A stretch of 64,000 bases of DNA, taken from assembly GCA_964106915.2 (NCBI GenBank), contig OZ066914.1; one strand, written 5' to 3'. This DNA is from Podarcis gaigeae. Lineage: Eukaryota. Below the pieces are notes generated by a model, which was given only the letters and a program-made list of their open reading frames with translations, did not search any database and had not been told where the DNA came from. A program made the translations under genes and the position numbers. Below are positions 6,876-62,651 of this stretch, in pieces (the stretch's first letter is position 1; every line of letters begins with the position of its first letter).

Positions 6876-8261
6876 TATAAGCGAACTTCATGCTCCTATC
6901 AGCTGCCCTTCCCTTCATAACCATGCAAGCTTCTCACTGGAAATGTTTGGTGGTGGCAGCCAGACAAACAAATGCACAATGGGGGCTGACCTCAAGTGGC
7001 TCACTATGTATATCAGCTATCATGCGGAGGCAGTTTCATGCAGCTTCCAAATGATTATATCGTGATTATAGCATTTTTTTTCAGCACAGCACTGTTGTAT
7101 TCGTTATCTAATTGGCATGACCTGTAGTTTATACAACTGCACTGCTTGTAGATCTTAAATCTACATAGCTCGTTCCCTCAGCAAAGCAGACTACTTTTTT
7201 TCTCTTGACCAACACAAGTTGGGCTTTCAGTTATGAAAATCAGCTTTTGATTTATTTATTTTTGAACTGGCAAAGGTTGGGTTGACTTAAAGCAGAGCTC
7301 ACCATAACTTATCCTAGGATTTAGTTCAGTGCCAGGCTCTGCCCTTGCCATGGAATGCAGTGCCTCTGAAAGTGCGCACTTGGCTTTTCTCTCAATGCTC
7401 AGTCATGGCCATAAGCCCCCACAATTTGGGATAGGTAGTATGGGCTTACGAATCGCAAGCTCTGGCACCCCTCAGTTTAGAAATTTCTCTGGCATAAAGC
7501 AATGCTCCAAGTTAAAAACAAAGCAATAAAAGACCTACAACTAGCCATTAGACAAAGTTAATCACCTTTATCTATAACTCTAACTATAGAAGAACTATTT
7601 TTAAATTCAACATAATCTTGGTAGATTTAAAGTGTGTGTGTAGTATGTAAAGCATCTGGTGAACAACAAAAAAAAAAAACCAATCTGCTAAAAGACACAG
7701 AGAACCAAAAAGGAAACACGAAAAACCAGTGACAGAGAGTGTTTGGGTAAAGGTAAGAAACAGTCTTCAGCAATTAAGAGAGAGAAATGGATTGTGAAGA
7801 AGAAAATAGACTTCTCTAGTATCTTTTAATAGGCTCACTGGACACTTGATAGATAGCACGCACCACTGACAAATACTAAACTGTTGCCCTCTATGGATAT
7901 TTCCCCTTTTTAGAATTCTGTAAAGAACGCCAAAGTTACATGGAGCTAGACAAAACATGACATTTAGCAAGCAAGCAAACTATCACACATCTAATAACAG
8001 GTTTATCTTTGTACTATGAAAGTTTTAAGAGAGAACATTTAGCAAACAGAACAGAAGTTACAAGTCACAACAAAAGGTAGCATTCCATATGACTTAACTA
8101 CTCTCCTTTCTTTCGCTTTTGAACAGTCGTGGATATGCACCTGGCCTGAGATCCATGCTAAAAGCATTTGATACTCCCACCAAAATGCTATGGAGAGCCA
8201 TTCACTCACAATACGTGTATTTTATGTAAAGTTCACAATTGTATTAAAGAAGCTTAGTCTG

Positions 8262-14375: not shown

Positions 14376-15306
14376 CCCTATATGATCCATATGTCCCAGT
14401 CAGTTTTCAGACCCAGATATGTAATAGGGACAAGAAGCACTAGTCCACATTTGTTGTTGGCATCCATCTGACTCAGGAGACAATGATGGAGTGTGCCTTC
14501 AGGGATGAAGCCAAACCATTGGAGAATTACAATGCCTGCTGTGGCTATAGAGACAAATATGGCTGAGACATGTTTTGTTGCAGCTGGGGCAGATGATGAC
14601 GTCTGATTATGCTGGTGCAGTATGGCATTTCTTTTCTTTCTGTGCTCCTCTCAGCTGTCATTCTTCCTCTGGTCACTGGGGTACACATTATGAAATTGCT
14701 ATAAGGGTATTTAACATACTGTATTAAAAGCGGGGTTTGGGTGGGTAAGAAACATCAAAAGTCCACTTAGGTCCATAGCAAACCTTTTCTGTATGTCCCA
14801 TGTGCATGCCACAGGGGATGGGTACAGGTGTTTGTTAGGATAGTTATTCATTATGCATGGGTTATGAAACTGTAGTAATTAGCTTTTTAAAAAAACTTCA
14901 GAAAAGATCTTTATCATACTAAATATCAGTAATAATAGAAACTGACCTGTGGTTCAGCAGCAACAGTCTTTAAGCAAAAAAAGAAAATCTGGAAGCTCTT
15001 TCCTTCCTTCCTTTTGTCCTTTTTTCTTTTTAAAACTATCTGTACTGCCATCCAACACAGCTCTCCTACTAACCACATACACCAAAAGTATAATACCCAT
15101 TCCTATTAGCAATACCTTTGATCTTCCTGCATTGAAGGTGATTGGTGTTCCTTCCAGTTATGATTCTCAGCTCATTAACATTATGATAATGCCTATCTAT
15201 GAAAAGTTATTTAGTTAACAGTTTTAAAATTGATAGATTGCATTGTGGCTCTCCTGCTTTGATATGTCTTGCTAAAGCATGAGAATTGTGTACATTGCTA
15301 TTTGTA

Positions 15307-24119: not shown

Positions 24120-24595
24120 CAGCTCTGCATCCTGTTCTCACAATGGCCAACTGGAGGCTTGTGGGAAACCTGCAAGCGGGATCTGAGCACAAGAGCACTC
24201 TTGCCCTCCTGTGGTGTCCAGCAAATGGTATTCAAAAGCATTGCTGCCTCCAACTATGAGGGCAGAGCATAGCCATCACAGCTAGTCACCATCGACAGCC
24301 CTCAGCCCTCTCCTCCGTTGTCCGATGCTCTTTTAAAGCCATCCAAGTCTGTGGCAATCACTGTGTCCTGTGGGAGGGAGTTCCACAGTTTAACTAATGC
24401 ACTGTGTGAAAAAGTTTCTTTTATTTGCCCTGGATCTTCCTACATTCATCGGATTGTCCGAAACTTCTGGTGTGAGAAAAGCCTTTCTCTACTCACTTTC
24501 TCCACGCAAGGCATAATTTTATAAACTTCTCTCAAGCCACCTCTTATTCCCCTAAGCTCAAAACTCCCAAACGCTGCAAGCTTTCCCCCCCTCTA
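24120..24595 (-). mobile_element. Old CR1 LINE 3' fragment
   Basis: Reverse complement resembles the CR1 RT C-terminus and 3'UTR. Homologous to 57780-57970. Confidence 0.6.
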
Positions 24596-24629: not shown

Positions 24630-25720
24630 AGGCATGCGGCTTCGACAACAGCTGCCTCACTCCCGCAGGAGGATGCTGACCTAGTAGGTCGGGCTGCCAC
24701 CCTCAGCATCCTTACTAGGTCAACTTCGGTCGGAAAAGTCCGCCAGGTAAACACGCGTCGCGCGAGGGCTGCCAATCTCCGGGGGGCGGGGCTCCGGCGG
24801 GCGCCGAGCGAGCCGCGCGCCCTTGGCGAGCGTGCGCCGGGCTCCCCGAGGCCCTTTTCCCGCCTTTTCTTGACAGAAAACGGCAAGCAGCCGTCTTGCC
24901 CGCCCGCCTGCCCTCCGCGCTCCTTGACCCCGGGAGCCGCCGCCGGGCTCCTCGGGGAAGAAGGGGGGCCCTTATGAGGGGGGGGGGTCGCTTCTAACCA
25001 AAAGCTCAGCAAAAAGCCGTTGGGACTCACACAGTGAAGTGATAGACGAAGCACTTCCAGCCGGTGGGTCTCTCCAGGAAGTTGTAGACCCTGCCTTGGA
25101 TGTGGCTGCGGCTCAGCAGAGGTCTGCGGACGCTGTAGATGGAGACGCGCGGGTCGAAGCTGACCGGAGGGCGAGGGTAGTCGCCGCCTCCGCCGCCGCT
25201 CATGGCCACGGTGGCTTCGGGCCCCTCGACGTACCGCGCGCGCTGCTGAGTCGCGCAGCCGGTGCCGCCGGGCGTCGTCCCCCCCGCGGGCGCGGAGAGC
25301 GAGAAAGGCGCGTAGTGCGCGTTGGCGGCGTTCTCGGCCAGCTCCAGAGCCGAGGGTTTCATGCTGCCTTTCCTGGACGTGACGGACAGGCGCCCCAAGC
25401 TCCACGGCTTCCTCTCCGCCTTGGGCGAGGAAGGAGAAGACATCGTAGAGGCGCGCGCGGAGGGGCGGGCCGGCGGGATGCGGAGCCAGGCAGCGAGCGC
25501 GACGCGTCTCTCGCTCGCTCTCCTTCCCCCGCGGCCTCCGCTCAAGTCCCCGAGAGCTCGCCTTGGCCCCGCCCACTCCGGGGGAGGGCTCCTCGGGGAA
25601 GGCCCCTGCTCCCTCCGCCTCGCCGCTGCCAGCAGCCACCCAAGGAGCCCCGGGGGCAGCGCGGCGGCGGCGGCTGCTCGTCCCTTACTCGCGCAAGACG
25701 GCCGAGACTTTCCGCAGCTG
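24630..25720. promoter_or_regulatory. CpG island covering the KCNQ1 promoter, 5'UTR, exon 1 and start of intron 1
   Basis: Abrupt GC- and CpG-rich block in an AT-rich, CpG-poor background. GC box GGGCGGGGCC on the minus strand at ~25565-25574. Confidence 0.85.
25031..25443 (-). CDS. KCNQ1: KCNQ1 (Kv7.1 voltage-gated K+ channel) first coding exon, 413 nt, ends in phase 2
   Basis: Translation [19 protein letters not shown]...RKGS...[49 protein letters not shown] matches the KCNQ1 N-terminus and start of S1 (human ...[48 protein letters not shown]). The ATG at 25443 has A at -3. A GTGAGT donor follows at 25030-25025, at the same codon position and phase as human exon 1. Confidence 0.96.
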
Positions 25721-57779: not shown

Positions 57780-57970
57780 AGGAGGAGAAGGCTATTGACA
57801 GCTACCAGGCATGAGGGCTGGAGGCAGTAATGATTCTGAATACCAAGTTGCCACAGGAGAGAAGAGGGCTCTTGTGTTCAAATCCTGCTTTCTGGCTTTC
57901 CACAAGCATCTGATTGTGAGAACAGAATGCTAGTCTAGATGGGACATTGGCATGATCCATGTTCTTATGT
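57780..57970 (+). mobile_element. Old CR1-type LINE 3' end that served as the L1 target
   Basis: Aligns by eye with the reverse complement of the CR1-like fragment at 24120-24260. Ends ...GATGGGACATTGGCATGATCCATGTTCTTATG. Confidence 0.6.
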
Positions 57971-57994
57971 ACATTCACGGTAATCTCTGGCTGG
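57826..57994 (+). repeat. Left copy of the 169-bp perfect direct repeat (putative TSD of the L1)
   Basis: AGTAATGATTCTGAATACC...GGTAATCTCTGGCTGG, base-for-base identical to 62483-62651 by manual comparison. Confidence 0.95.
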
Positions 57995-58431
57995 CCTTCA
58001 GACTTGGAAGACTCACAAAGAGAGAAAAGCCCAGAGACTGTTTGATTACGTTGAGATCAAAGGAGGAAAGGGACAAGATTTTGGGCCTGCACTACGGAAG
58101 ATCCCTGAACATTTCGGACAAAAGAATTGAGATTTTTAAGGACATTCCTAAACAGCTGTTGGACCTCAGATCTGAATATTTGGACTTAGTAAAACTGCTG
58201 AGAAGCAACTCAATCATCTTTAGGTGGGACTTTCCCCAAGGATTATCTTTTACCTTTAGAGGGAAGAAGATTAAAATTAGAACTTTGGAAGATAGGGATA
58301 AGTTTTTGACTGCCTACGGAGAGGACCTTCATAAAGGACTTGAACTACCCTCAGGGCCTGAACCACCACAGGTACCTGTACCTCAGAACCCTGAAGACTC
58401 ACAGAACAAAACACCATCCCAAGGAAACTAA
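57952..58431 (+). CDS. C-terminal half of L1 ORF1p (end of RRM plus CTD), fused in frame to an ATG in the flanking target DNA
   Basis: AFRLG...KPRDCLITL...KRIEIFKDIP...FRWDFPQGLSF resembles the L1 ORF1p RRM/CTD. The first 14 codons (57952-57993) come from the duplicated host flank. Confidence 0.7.
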   Translation: MIHVLMYIHGNLWLAFRLGRLTKREKPRDCLITLRSKEERDKILGLHYGRSLNISDKRIEIFKDIPKQLLDLRSEYLDLVKLLRSNSIIFRWDFPQGLSFTFRGKKIKIRTLEDRDKFLTAYGEDLHKGLELPSGPEPPQVPVPQNPEDSQNKTPSQGN

Positions 58432-61400
58432 ACAGATCCATCCAGGATGTCTCTGCAACTTTTAAGCTGGAACATAAATGGCTGTAACAGCCCGGAAAAA
58501 AGGAAGAAAATCTTTCACATATTAAAAAAGGAGCAACTAGACATTACTTGTCTACAAGAAACACATGTGACTAGGCTCCACAGAAAAATATTGGTAAATA
58601 AAAGGTTAGGCCAAGAATTTATATCTTCGGATTCAGTTAAGAAGAGAGGAGTGGTGATATATGCAAAGGAGAGCCTCTCACCAAAATTTCTATTTAAAGA
58701 TGAACATGGAAGAATTTTGGCAATTGAAATACAGCACCAAGGAGAGAAAATTTTGATATTAGGAATCTACGCTCCAAATGAAGGGAAATCAGAATTCTAC
58801 AAGAAGTTGCATGAGATTATGCTGGATTATCTGGACTATGATAACATCATCATGATGGGAGATATGAATGGGATCGTTTCAACGAACATGGATAGGTCAC
58901 AAAGCCAAAAGGTTACTAAAGATGGCAGACTACCAAAGACCTTTTTCGAAATGACAGACAACATGGACTGGATTGATATATGGAGGACAAAGAACCCCTT
59001 GGGGAAAGAAGGAACATTTTTCTCTGAAGCCCAACTGACTTGGACAAGAATTGACCAAATATGGATTTCTAGAGGTCTGGCTCCTAAGGTGAAGAAAGTG
59101 GAAATCTGCCCAAAGACCTGCTCCGATCATAATGCGTTGAAAATGGACATGACATTATTACCAACCGGCTCCTTTAGATGGAAGATGAATGACAACTTGT
59201 TTAGAGATCAGGAGATTATTAAGAAGGCCAAAAAAACAATAAAGGACTACTTTGAGATAAATTTGAACACTGCTGTGGAAAAAAGAACAATCTGGGACGC
59301 AAGCAAAGCTGTGATGAGAGGGTTCTTGATACAACAGAACGCCATAAAGAAAAGACTACAAAATGAGAAAAAGGATAAGATTTTGGGGAAAATTAAAGAG
59401 TTAGAGAAGAAACTAAGAGTAAACCCGAAGTCACAGCCGATCTTGAGAGAAATTAAACTTCATCAGGCACAATATTCCAAACTGATAAATCAGGAAATAG
59501 AATGGAAGATTAAATTAATGAAACAAAAAACATTTGAATCGGCTAACAAATGTGGGAAACTGCTGGCTTGGCAGTTGAAGAAGAGACAAAAGTTGAACAT
59601 AGTAACAAATTTGGAAATAGAAGGAAGATATATTCAGAACCCGGTGGAAATTAGAAAATGTTTCCAGAAATATTTTAAGAAATTATACACTCAAGGGCCA
59701 CAAAATGAGGAAGAGATTGCAAAATTTTTGGAGAAAAATGGACTTAAAAAACTATCACAAGAAAATAGATCACTCCTGAATAGTAAAATAACACGATTAG
59801 AGATAGAACATGCCATTCAGAATATGAAGCTGGGCAAGTCTCCAGGGCCAGATGGCTTGACCTCCAAGTATTATAAGACATTAAGTGACTATTTGATTCA
59901 ACCACTGATGGAGGTCAGCAATGAAATTATGGAGGGAAAGAAGGCGCCTGAATCGTGGAAGGAAGCTTTCATCACATTGATACCAAAATCAGAAACTGAA
60001 AAGACACAACTTAAGAACTACCGTCCCATTTCCCTTTTAAATGTGGATTATAAAATATTTGCTGACGTTTTGGCAGGAAGACTCAAAAGAGTTTTAAATG
60101 AGATAATTCATAAAGACCAGGCAGGCTTTCTCCCAGGAAGACACTTGTTTGCTAATACAAGGAACATTATTGACATTTTGGAACTTTTGCAAACAAATAT
60201 TAACACTAAAGCAGTTTTAATTTTTATAGACGCGGAGAAGGCCTTCGATAACATCTCTTGGAAATTTATGAAGGGGAATTTAAAAGAAATGGGAGTGGGG
60301 CGGGGTTTTGAAAATGGGATTGACGCGATTTATTCAGAACAAAAGGCAAAACTGATAGTCAACAATGTGGTTACAGAAGAGTTTAAGATTGAAAAAGGGA
60401 CACGACAAGGCTGCCCGATTTCCCCCTTGCTGTTTATTTCTGTCCTGGAGGTGCTCTTGAACTTGATTAGAGGGGACCGGTTGGTGCAAGGGATTCAGAT
60501 CGGAGCGAAACAATATAAACTTAAAGCTTTTGCAGATGACCTTGTTTTGACATTGCAAGAGCCAGAATCTAGCACAAAAAGAGTGTTACAATTGATTCAG
60601 GACTTTGGTCGGGTAGCGGGCTTCAAACTAAATAAACAGAAAACTAAGGTGTTGGGAAAAAACTTGACAGATGCAGAGTCAGAACGGTTTCAGAGAGAAA
60701 CAGAACTAACTGTGGTTAAAAAAGTAAAGTACCTAGGGGTAAACATAACAGCAAAAAATCTGAGTCTATTTAAGGACAATTATGAAAAATGTTGGTCTGA
60801 AATTAAGAGAGACTTGGACAGTTGGTCAAAATTGAAGCTTTCTTTGCTAGGCCGAATTGCTGCTATTAAGATGAATGTATTGCCTAGGATGTTGTTTTTG
60901 TTTCAAACATTGCAAATTGTGGACAAGACGGAGTGTTTCAGGAAGTGGCAGAGAGATATTTCTAAATTTGTCTGGCAGGGCAAAAAGCCCAGAATTAAGT
61001 TTAAGATATTAACTGATGCGAAAGAAAGAGGGGGCTTTGCCCTGCCAGACTTAAGGTTGTACTATGAAGCCGCAGCTTTCTGCTGGCTAAAAGACTGGCT
61101 ACTTCTAGAGGACACTGATGTGTTAGATTTAGAAGGTTTTAACAATGCATTTGGTTGGCATGCATACTTATGGTATGACAAAGTTAAGATCAATAAGGCC
61201 TTTAAGAACCATATTGTCAGGAAAGCAGTGTTTAATGTCTGGACAAAATACAAAGACCTATTGGAAAATAAAACTCCAAGATGGCTATCACCTCTGGAGG
61301 CTAAGGCCCGAAAAAGACCCAATATGGAGGCCAAATGGCCGAAATATTGGGAAATAATAGAGAAAGAGGGCAATAATTGGAAATTGCAGAGTTTGGAAAA

Positions 61401-62482
61401 AATGAAAGACAAAGTGCGAGACTGGTTACATTACGCTCAGATTCAAGAAATTTTTAAAAAGGATAAAAAGTTAGGATTCCAGGTGGAGAAATCGAAGTTG
61501 GAAACAGAATTGTTAGAACCTAAGACTAAAGTACTCTCAAGAATGTATAACTTGCTGTTGAAATGGAATACACAAGATGAAATGGTTAAGTCGGCCATGA
61601 TAAAGTGGGCACAGGATATTGGGCATAATATTATGTTTGAGGATTGGGAAAGGTTGTGGACCACGGGGATGAACTTCACGGCATGTAATGCTCTGAAGGA
61701 AAATGTAATGAAAATGATATATAGGTGGTACATGACCCCAGTTAAACTTGCCAAAATATGCCATGTGCCAGATAATAAATGTTGGAAATGTAAGGAAAAT
61801 GAAGGAACATTCTTTCACCTCTGGTGGACTTGTCCCAGGGTGAAGGTCTTCTGGGAAATGATATATAATGAGCTGAAAAAGGTATTTAAGTATACCTTCC
61901 TTAAGAAACCAGAGGCCTTCCTCCTGGGCATTGTCGGCCAGATGGTGCCAAAGAAGGATCGAACATTCTTTTTGTACGCAACAGCAGCAGCAAGGATACT
62001 TATCGCCAAGAAGTGGAAAACTCAAGATCTACCCACTCTGGAAGAATGGCAGATGCAGCTGATGGACTATATGCAACTGGCTGAGATGACTGGCAGAATT
62101 CGAGACCTGGGAGAAGAGAGGGTTGAAGAAGATTGGAGGAAATTTAAGACTTATTTACAAAAATACTGTGATTTGGTGGAAAGTTAAGTAGGATGTTTGA
62201 TCATAAATAATTGGCCACCACAAAATCGGATCGGAATGGGATGTAAAGTGAGATTAAGAGAAATTAATTTGCAGAGGACTATATTTAAATAAGTGGTTAT
62301 AAAATTTGCAAATTAGATGATAAATTGCATGGAAAAAATCTATGATGATGAAAATGGCAGCGGGAGATGTGAGGAAGTCCAAAGAAGTTATGAAACTCTG
62401 TTGAGATAAAAGTAAGGTTGTTTATTGTCTTTGTACTTTATTCTGTAAAAACCCCTAATAAAAAATTTTATTAAAAAAAAAA
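57995..62482 (+). mobile_element. L1-clade LINE, 5'-truncated within ORF1, with intact ORF2, 3'UTR, AATAAA and A-tail
   Basis: ORF1 remnant, 15-nt spacer (58432-58446), ORF2, AATAAA at 62457-62462 and A-run at 62473-62483. Flanked by an identical 169-bp direct repeat. Confidence 0.95.
58447..62187 (+). CDS. LINE-1-type ORF2p (APE endonuclease + reverse transcriptase + C-terminal CCHC), 1246 aa, uninterrupted
   Basis: APE motifs SWNING, LQETH, IYAPN, GDMN, SDH. RT motifs KSPGPDG, YRPISLLN, DAEKAFD, RQGCPISP, FADD, KYLG. C-terminal CWKC...HLWWTC. Confidence 0.96.
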   Translation: MSLQLLSWNINGCNSPEKRKKIFHILKKEQLDITCLQETHVTRLHRKILVNKRLGQEFISSDSVKKRGVVIYAKESLSPKFLFKDEHGRILAIEIQHQGEKILILGIYAPNEGKSEFYKKLHEIMLDYLDYDNIIMMGDMNGIVSTNMDRSQSQKVTKDGRLPKTFFEMTDNMDWIDIWRTKNPLGKEGTFFSEAQLTWTRIDQIWISRGLAPKVKKVEICPKTCSDHNALKMDMTLLPTGSFRWKMNDNLFRDQEIIKKAKKTIKDYFEINLNTAVEKRTIWDASKAVMRGFLIQQNAIKKRLQNEKKDKILGKIKELEKKLRVNPKSQPILREIKLHQAQYSKLINQEIEWKIKLMKQKTFESANKCGKLLAWQLKKRQKLNIVTNLEIEGRYIQNPVEIRKCFQKYFKKLYTQGPQNEEEIAKFLEKNGLKKLSQENRSLLNSKITRLEIEHAIQNMKLGKSPGPDGLTSKYYKTLSDYLIQPLMEVSNEIMEGKKAPESWKEAFITLIPKSETEKTQLKNYRPISLLNVDYKIFADVLAGRLKRVLNEIIHKDQAGFLPGRHLFANTRNIIDILELLQTNINTKAVLIFIDAEKAFDNISWKFMKGNLKEMGVGRGFENGIDAIYSEQKAKLIVNNVVTEEFKIEKGTRQGCPISPLLFISVLEVLLNLIRGDRLVQGIQIGAKQYKLKAFADDLVLTLQEPESSTKRVLQLIQDFGRVAGFKLNKQKTKVLGKNLTDAESERFQRETELTVVKKVKYLGVNITAKNLSLFKDNYEKCWSEIKRDLDSWSKLKLSLLGRIAAIKMNVLPRMLFLFQTLQIVDKTECFRKWQRDISKFVWQGKKPRIKFKILTDAKERGGFALPDLRLYYEAAAFCWLKDWLLLEDTDVLDLEGFNNAFGWHAYLWYDKVKINKAFKNHIVRKAVFNVWTKYKDLLENKTPRWLSPLEAKARKRPNMEAKWPKYWEIIEKEGNNWKLQSLEKMKDKVRDWLHYAQIQEIFKKDKKLGFQVEKSKLETELLEPKTKVLSRMYNLLLKWNTQDEMVKSAMIKWAQDIGHNIMFEDWERLWTTGMNFTACNALKENVMKMIYRWYMTPVKLAKICHVPDNKCWKCKENEGTFFHLWWTCPRVKVFWEMIYNELKKVFKYTFLKKPEAFLLGIVGQMVPKKDRTFFLYATAAARILIAKKWKTQDLPTLEEWQMQLMDYMQLAEMTGRIRDLGEERVEEDWRKFKTYLQKYCDLVES

Positions 62483-62651
62483 AGTAATGATTCTGAATAC
62501 CAAGTTGCCACAGGAGAGAAGAGGGCTCTTGTGTTCAAATCCTGCTTTCTGGCTTTCCACAAGCATCTGATTGTGAGAACAGAATGCTAGTCTAGATGGG
62601 ACATTGGCATGATCCATGTTCTTATGTACATTCACGGTAATCTCTGGCTGG
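62483..62651 (+). repeat. Right copy of the 169-bp perfect direct repeat (putative TSD of the L1)
   Basis: Starts immediately after the L1 A-tail and is identical to 57826-57994. Confidence 0.95.

What the first reader, a model, noticed from the sequence alone, without database searches (positions are those of the whole stretch)
57826..62651. Young L1-clade LINE flanked by a perfect 169-bp target-site duplication at a non-canonical site
Seen: 57826-57994 and 62483-62651 are identical over 169 bp (168 if the first A belongs to the tail). They abut the 5'-truncation point and the A-tail exactly. The inferred first-nick site (GAGGC|AGTAATG) does not match the mammalian L1 TT|AAAA consensus. Known: L1 TSDs are usually about 7-20 bp; TSDs over 100 bp are exceptional (rotifer R9 elements make ~126 bp). 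Inference: either this squamate L1 lineage makes widely staggered second-strand nicks, or this copy integrated at a pre-existing lesion. The length is close to one chromatosome (~167 bp), so nicks on either side of a nucleosome are a testable but speculative idea. If the long TSD is family-wide, it would be an undescribed integration mode that duplicates host DNA with each insertion.
Basis: partly seen in the sequence, partly recalled or inferred. Interest (0 to 1): 0.85.

Follow-up and report, generated by a model that had tools for sequence, protein, structure and literature searches.

The report
Lizard L1 insertion, rare long duplication
A recently inserted L1 jumping gene in a wall-lizard genome copied 169 bases of host DNA on both sides, about ten times what its relatives copy (median 17), so it looks like a rare outcome of ordinary insertion and not a new way of inserting.

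Summary
Observation confirmed: 57826-57994 and 62483-62651 are identical over 169 bp. They flank a 4.49-kb, 5'-truncated L1-type LINE with an intact ORF2 (Podarcis-like host, about 32 kb upstream of KCNQ1). Contigs from another individual and two related species run through one copy of the 169 bp. A same-species run branches exactly where the poly(A) junction predicts. So it is most likely a real, very young target-site duplication (TSD); the 5' junction was not seen in read data.

The family-wide reading is not supported. Twelve related Podarcis copies (76-89% identical) have TSDs of 8-39 bp, median 17; the nearest has 17. The 'non-canonical' site is normal for this lineage: only 1 of 12 relatives resembles TT|AAAA. 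TSDs over 100 bp are known L1 outcomes in cultured cells, but nearly absent from human germline surveys.

This scan noted similar cases before on other DNA of this genome (unchecked: L1 177 and 84 bp, Sauria SINE ~110 bp), and I found a possible 123-bp case in P. lilfordi. A recurrent long tail, perhaps capped near one nucleosome or Okazaki-fragment length, stays open (~25%). The >95%-identical subfamily could not be sampled.

The parts
57826..57994 (.). Left copy of the target-site duplication (169 bp; 167-169 allowing for end ambiguity). Native host DNA, largely an old interspersed-repeat fragment that continues across the left junction
   Evidence: identity; an older copy of the repeat at window ~24127-24252 (-) aligns across 57819-57930, i.e. 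over the 57825/57826 junction; contigs of X1, X2, X3 run from the left flank into it unbroken
57995..58431 (+). C-terminal remnant of ORF1 (about 145 codons); 5' truncation point at 57995, about 1.6 kb of 5'UTR and ORF1 missing
   Evidence: matches the C-terminal part of the longer ORF1 in L010. Full-length relative L001 starts about 1.6 kb further 5'
58447..62187 (+). Intact ORF2, 1246 aa: APE-type endonuclease, reverse transcriptase (FADD at 695), C-terminal CCHC at 1112
   Evidence: PF03372, PF00078; human L1 ORF2p E 6e-176 over residues 4-1213; N9, E38, Y108, D139, N141, D203, D227-H228 present
62188..62472 (+). 3' UTR with AATAAA at 62457-62462
   Evidence: similar 3' ends in L002 and L010
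62473..62482 (+). Poly(A) tail (A10; A11 if 62483 is counted)
62483..62651 (.). Right copy of the target-site duplication
   Evidence: contigs of X1, X2 and X15 run from inside it (62518) into the right flank unbroken

Best explanation
A recent insertion of an ordinary lacertid L1-type LINE by target-primed reverse transcription, in which the second-strand end lay unusually far from the first nick. Shown: element anatomy, intact endonuclease residues, single-copy empty site in relatives, 8-39 bp TSDs in related copies. Inferred steps: (1) ORF2p nicked the bottom strand at 57825/57826, a site within this lineage's relaxed preference. (2) Reverse transcription stopped inside ORF1. (3) The top-strand 3' end used for second-strand synthesis lay about 168 nt downstream instead of the usual 17 or so. 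It was either a host-made break (repair or replication nick) or an end extended by copying the sister chromatid. It joined the cDNA over 1 nt of microhomology. (4) Fill-in duplicated the interval. This is the rare 'long TSD' outcome known for 5'-truncated L1 insertions in cultured cells, here recorded in a germline genome. It is not a property of the family.
For: Exact 169-bp identity abutting both junctions. Empty site with a single copy in X1, X2, X3, and a contig end at 57855 in X15 where a poly(A) junction predicts it. Relatives' TSDs: 8, 14, 17, 17, 17, 17, 17, 19, 21, 22, ~24, 39; the sister copy L002 has 17. Relaxed nick sites throughout the lineage. PMC5223499: TSDs over 100 bp in up to 10% of HeLa de novo events and 57-91% in NER-deficient cells, attributed there to a distal unrelated nick. 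PMC2912911: extreme target alterations go with 5'-truncated copies. PMC2666801: 1 of 25 zebrafish L2 insertions in wild-type DT40 cells had a 1228-bp TSD.
Against: No copy of the >95%-identical subfamily or of the same species could be measured. 0 of 12 only bounds the long fraction below about 22%. The 5' junction was not among the listed contig pieces, and the X15 contig crosses 62651 unbroken. Three unchecked scan notes in 258 windows suggest long TSDs may be more frequent here than in the human germline, where nearly all are under 30 bp (PMC4805530).
Confidence: 0.72

Rival explanations
1. Host-level recurrent long tail or second mode: in lacertid germ cells a few percent of retro-insertions (L1, and also Bov-B-mobilised SINEs) use a distal top-strand end set by replication or chromatin, such as an Okazaki-fragment 3' end or a nucleosome boundary. 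This gives TSDs spread up to about 200 bp. It refines the best explanation and does not exclude it.
For: Unchecked scan notes in the same genome: L1 TSDs of 177 and 84 bp, Sauria SINE ~110 bp. A 123-bp 99% direct repeat around a 1.69-kb T-run-bearing insert in P. lilfordi L007. A 39-bp TSD in L004. None noted above 200 bp. L1 is proposed to cut around Okazaki fragments on the lagging strand (PMC12809410). Published TSD screens stop at 30 bp (PMC2912911) or 49 bp (PMC13295347) and would miss such a tail.
Against: Only 4-5 cases, three unchecked and picked out for being striking, with no denominator. The L007 case has no empty-site test. No 10-bp WW periodicity in the 169 bp (p about 0.47; a weak test). 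Long TSDs in cultured cells extend to kilobases with no 200-bp cap.
Confidence: 0.25
2. Family- or subfamily-specific long stagger: this L1 lineage routinely cuts the second strand about 170 bp away, as rotifer R9 does at a fixed long distance.
For: The youngest subfamily (>95% identity) was not sampled. A second L1 with a 177-bp TSD was noted in this genome (unchecked; its subfamily is unknown).
Against: All 12 relatives, on both sides of the tree root, have 8-39 bp, and the sister copy (91% over the 3' ORF2 part) has 17. The endonuclease is 91% identical to its nearest P. muralis relative with no insertions. An L1 with a 16-bp TSD was noted in this same genome (s1-656178, unchecked).
Confidence: 0.04
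3. Assembly artefact: merged haplotypes or a contig overlap created the second copy.
For: The 5' junction is not independently seen, and no long reads were available. Overlap-type duplicates exist in Podarcis assemblies: 522 bp either side of an N gap in L003.
Against: No gap in the window. The copies abut both element ends to the base, and a false left join would have only 1 nt of overlap to build on. X15 alone has a contig end at 57855, exactly 30 nt into the repeat.
Confidence: 0.06
4. Pre-existing 169-bp tandem duplication, a 3' transduction, or endonuclease-independent capture at a double-strand break.
For: Poor priming match at the nick (3 A in the first 5 nt of the repeat); 4 mismatches to TT|AAAA.
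Against: Contigs of X1, X2 and X3 cross the left boundary, and those of X1 and X2 the right boundary, without a branch, so no tandem copy there. The left copy is continuous with the host repeat. There is no second A-tail. The 3' end is intact with AATAAA and tail. L007 has an equally mismatched site with a 17-bp TSD.
Confidence: 0.04

Closest known systems
Squamate L1-type LINEs of Podarcis muralis and P. lilfordi (e.g. UniRef A0A670J226, 93% aa; Anolis relatives about 42%)
   Same: ORF1 + ORF2 layout, AATAAA and A-tail, 5' truncation, relaxed purine-rich target
   Different: This copy's TSD is 167-169 bp against 8-39 bp (median 17) in 12 relatives
Long-TSD human L1 insertions in HeLa and NER-deficient cells (PMC5223499; Gilbert 2002/2005 and Symer 2002 as cited there)
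   Same: 5'-truncated, polyadenylated insertion with a TSD over 100 bp, explained by a distal second-strand nick
   Different: Those are engineered insertions in cultured cells with lengths up to kilobases. This one is a natural, apparently polymorphic germline insertion, a setting where human TSDs are nearly all under 30 bp (PMC4805530)
Rotifer R9
   Same: TSD over 100 bp
   Different: R9 is 28S-rDNA-specific; from general knowledge it has a restriction-like endonuclease and a fixed long TSD. Here the endonuclease is APE-type, targets are dispersed, and relatives have short TSDs
L1-associated small tandem duplications attributed to break-induced replication (bioRxiv 10.1101/2024.12.14.628481)
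   Same: Duplication at an L1 insertion site treated as a large TSD; a possible route to this structure
   Different: Those are 1-10 kb and come from cancer genomes and experimental clones

Membership tests
L1 clade LINE | ORF1 followed by ORF2 | tested here: met
   ORF1 remnant 57995-58431 matches the ORF1 of relative L010; ORF2 starts at 58447
L1 clade LINE | N-terminal APE endonuclease with catalytic residues | tested here: met
   PF03372; alignment to human ORF2p and conserved N9, E38, Y108, D139, N141, D203, D227-H228
L1 clade LINE | RT and C-terminal CCHC; full-length similarity to L1 ORF2p | tested here: met
   PF00078; human ORF2p E 6e-176 over 4-1213 against R2 at E 1e-21; CCHC at 1112
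L1 clade LINE | AATAAA and poly(A) 3' end | tested here: met
   62457-62462 and 62473-62482
L1 clade LINE | RT phylogeny placing it in L1 proper and not in the sister Tx1 group | not tested
   No Tx1 references were fetched; the tree holds Podarcis copies only
Canonical mammalian-type L1 insertion signature | TSD of about 7-20 bp | tested here: not met
   167-169 bp in this copy; met by 8 of 12 relatives, the rest being 21-39 bp
Canonical mammalian-type L1 insertion signature | TT|AAAA first-nick site | tested here: not met
   4 mismatches here; 1-4 mismatches in the 11 tabulated relatives; only the L004 inner copy resembles it. A lineage trait, not special to this copy
R9-like fixed long-TSD element | Same long TSD in all copies | tested here: not met
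   0 of 12 relatives above 39 bp; the >95% subfamily was not sampled
R9-like fixed long-TSD element | Site-specific rDNA target and restriction-like endonuclease | tested here: not met
   Dispersed unrelated targets; APE endonuclease
True target-site duplication | Single copy at the empty site | tested here: met
   X2 contigs overlap by exactly 30 nt inside the repeat and link both flanks; X1 agrees (29-nt overlap); X3 covers the left boundary
True target-site duplication | Both junctions present in raw data | tested here: inconclusive
   3' junction implied by the X15 contig end at 57855; 5' junction not among the listed pieces; no long reads

The most novel reading that the evidence does not exclude
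Lacertid germline retrotransposition has a recurrent long-TSD class (a few percent of events, across L1 and Bov-B-mobilised SINEs) whose lengths run up to, and stop at, about one Okazaki fragment or nucleosome repeat (~180-200 bp). That would point to second-strand priming from nascent lagging-strand ends. Published screens capped at 30-49 bp would have missed it.
Probability: 0.25. Interest if true: 0.6.

Novelty: new member of a known kind. Interest (0 to 1): 0.3.

Why it matters
As a single event it is a curiosity: a known rare outcome of L1 insertion, caught in a natural vertebrate genome where such events are seldom documented. It would matter more if the long tail is recurrent and capped near 200 bp. 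How the second strand is broken and primed in L1 integration is still open (PMC12809410), and an uncapped TSD histogram from Podarcis genomes, which are rich in young L1 copies, would test the replication-fork model in a germline with computation alone.

Tried and rejected
Rejected: family-wide long TSD (12 relatives), unusual target site as evidence of a lesion (lineage-wide relaxed sites), pre-existing tandem duplication and 3' transduction (single-copy empty site, native left copy, one tail), damaged endonuclease (catalytic residues intact). No nucleosome-type 10-bp WW signal in the 169 bp (weak test). The exact ORF2 is not in the protein collection, and most close homologues are UniRef entries without DNA, so only 11 loci could be fetched. 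The Ichiyanagi papers on zebrafish L1 target alterations were not held. Two paper searches (nucleosome-linked TSD length; unusually long TSDs of polymorphic L1) found nothing, and one on squamate L1 TSDs found only an unrelated paper; the library lacks most subscription papers.

Full report
1. Observation. The two stretches 57826-57994 and 62483-62651 are identical for exactly 169 nt and cannot be extended; the window has no N. They enclose 4,488 bp (57995-62482). The enclosed sequence holds the last ~145 codons of an ORF1, an intact 1246-aa ORF2 (58447-62187), a 3' UTR with AATAAA and an A10 tail. Both end bases are ambiguous. The first A may be tail. The last G is also the element's own base at the truncation point, shown by the loose end before 57994 and by relative L010. 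The TSD is thus 167-169 bp, with 1 nt of microhomology at the 5' junction.

2. The element. ORF2 has an APE endonuclease and an RT, matches human L1 ORF2p over nearly its full length (E 6e-176), keeps the endonuclease catalytic residues and has a CCHC motif. Its closest proteins are Podarcis muralis L1 ORF2s at 91-95%; Anolis relatives are about 42%. The host is therefore a Podarcis-like lacertid (inference). Contig depth rises towards the 3' end in all four runs, as expected of a high-copy, 5'-truncated LINE family (depth is not a copy number). The insertion lies about 32 kb upstream of KCNQ1 exon 1, which is on the minus strand at about 25030-25440. L1 versus Tx1 placement was not tested.

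3. Is the duplication real? The 169 bp is mostly an old host repeat. Another copy in the window aligns across the left junction, so the left copy is native there. In one search, run X2 (a related species) has one contig from the left flank to 57890 and another from 62518 to the right flank. 62518 corresponds to 57861, so the two overlap by exactly 30 nt and form one path through a single copy. X1 (another sample of the same species) shows the same with a 29-nt overlap. X3 crosses the left boundary. None branches at the repeat start, so there is no pre-existing tandem copy. In X15 (same species, perhaps the assembled animal) the left contig stops at 57855, 30 nt into the repeat. That is where a 31-mer graph must break if a second edge, the poly(A) junction, enters at the repeat start. 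The limit of this evidence: X15's right contig crosses 62651 unbroken, where the 5' junction should also cause a branch, and that junction was not among the listed pieces. Graph cleaning next to a high-copy repeat could explain this (inference), but the 5' junction is not independently confirmed. A false join would have only 1 nt of overlap, so I put an artefact at about 6%. The lack of a branch in X1 suggests the insertion is polymorphic and very young.

4. Is it family-wide? I fetched 11 loci from P. lilfordi and P. muralis through called genes, so they were not selected by TSD. Twelve insertions could be measured: L001 19, L002 17, L003 outer 17 and inner 21, L004 outer 39 and inner 8, L005 14 plus a short copy with 17, L006 17, L007 17, L009 about 24 (microsatellite, ambiguous), L011 22. 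Median 17, none above 39. Those with a long alignment are 76-89% identical to our element. In a tree of the 3' ORF2 region our copy is sister to L002 (17 bp), and short TSDs occur on both sides of the midpoint root. 0 of 12 bounds the long fraction at about 22% (95%). The >95% subfamily and the host species itself were not sampled, so a subfamily-specific change is unlikely but not excluded.

5. The target site. Nick contexts of relatives include TT|CAGAAA, TT|GGAAGT, CC|AAGGAA, GC|AAGAAG and TG|GAGAAG, with 1-4 mismatches to TT|AAAA. Only the L004 inner copy looks canonical. GC|AGTAAT is at the weak end of this range but inside it, so it is no evidence for a lesion.

6. Mechanism. Shown: anatomy, intact endonuclease residues, single-copy empty site, short TSDs in relatives. 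Inferred: standard target-primed reverse transcription at 57825/57826, early termination inside ORF1, and use of a top-strand 3' end about 168 nt downstream, followed by fill-in. That end may be a host-made nick, the model given for long TSDs in NER-deficient cells (PMC5223499). It may instead be a normally cut end extended by copying the sister chromatid, as proposed for 1-10 kb duplications (bioRxiv 10.1101/2024.12.14.628481). One copy cannot separate the two. The 169 bp shows no 10-bp WW periodicity (weak test).

7. Comparison with what is known. TSDs over 100 bp make up at most 10% of de novo L1 events in HeLa cells and 57-91% in NER-deficient lines. One of 25 zebrafish L2 insertions in wild-type DT40 cells had 1228 bp (PMC2666801). 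Extreme alterations go with 5'-truncated copies (PMC2912911). In human germline, disease and tumour sets nearly all TSDs are under 30 bp (PMC4805530). The structure is thus a known class, uncommon in a natural genome. It does not resemble R9, whose long TSD is fixed and tied to one rDNA site.

8. What stays open. This scan's unchecked notes list, within 258 windows of the same genome, L1 copies with 177-bp and 84-bp TSDs and a Sauria SINE with about 110 bp, besides L1 copies with ordinary TSDs such as 16 bp. These moved me from 'one-off' to 'possibly a recurrent tail'; I could not test them. I also found a 123-bp, 99% direct repeat around a 1.69-kb non-ORF2 insert in P. lilfordi (L007), without an empty-site test. 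The values 84, 110, 123, 169 and 177 are spread and none exceeds 200. That fits a host-set distal end, for example an Okazaki-fragment end given the lagging-strand preference discussed in PMC12809410, better than a fixed chromatosome stagger. With five selected cases it is only a lead. Published TSD screens stop at 30 bp or, for squamate Bov-B and Sauria SINE, at 49 bp (PMC13295347), so such a tail would have been missed.

9. Verdict. Real, young L1-type insertion with a rare long TSD (0.72). Family-specific mode 0.04; artefact 0.06; other 0.04. Novelty: new member of a known kind. Interest 0.3.

Noticed in passing
L007:13235-13357 and 15044-15166 (P. lilfordi OX395127.1): 123-bp 99% direct repeat flanking a 1.69-kb insert with no ORF2 similarity and a T12 run 17 nt inside the left copy; a possible second long TSD or templated insertion. 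No empty site tested.
   Followed up: partly
L003:6730-7247 and 7348-7869: 522-bp 99% repeat on either side of a 100-N gap, typical of an assembly overlap; lies in a nested L1-in-L1 insertion (outer TSD 17, inner 21).
   Followed up: partly
L004:9239-15146: L1 nested in an L1 (inner TSD 8, outer 39, or about 35 given the ACAA tail), the pair inserted in what looks like another L1-like ORF1.
   Followed up: partly
window:57952-58431 (+): An ATG inside the left TSD copy opens a 159-aa frame fused to the ORF1 remnant; probably coincidence.
   Followed up: no
window:25030-25440 (-): First coding exon of KCNQ1 (phmmer E 8e-27 to solved KCNQ1 chains); the L1 lies about 32 kb upstream of it.
   Followed up: yes
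L001, L003, L005, L011 and window 5' junctions: Several TSDs end in GG or G next to the element's 5' end (full-length copies start GGACTTCC or similar), suggesting microhomology-guided 5' joining in this lineage.
   Followed up: no
window:57723: The window has T where contigs of all four runs have C: a private allele on the L1-bearing haplotype, or an assembly error.
   Followed up: no
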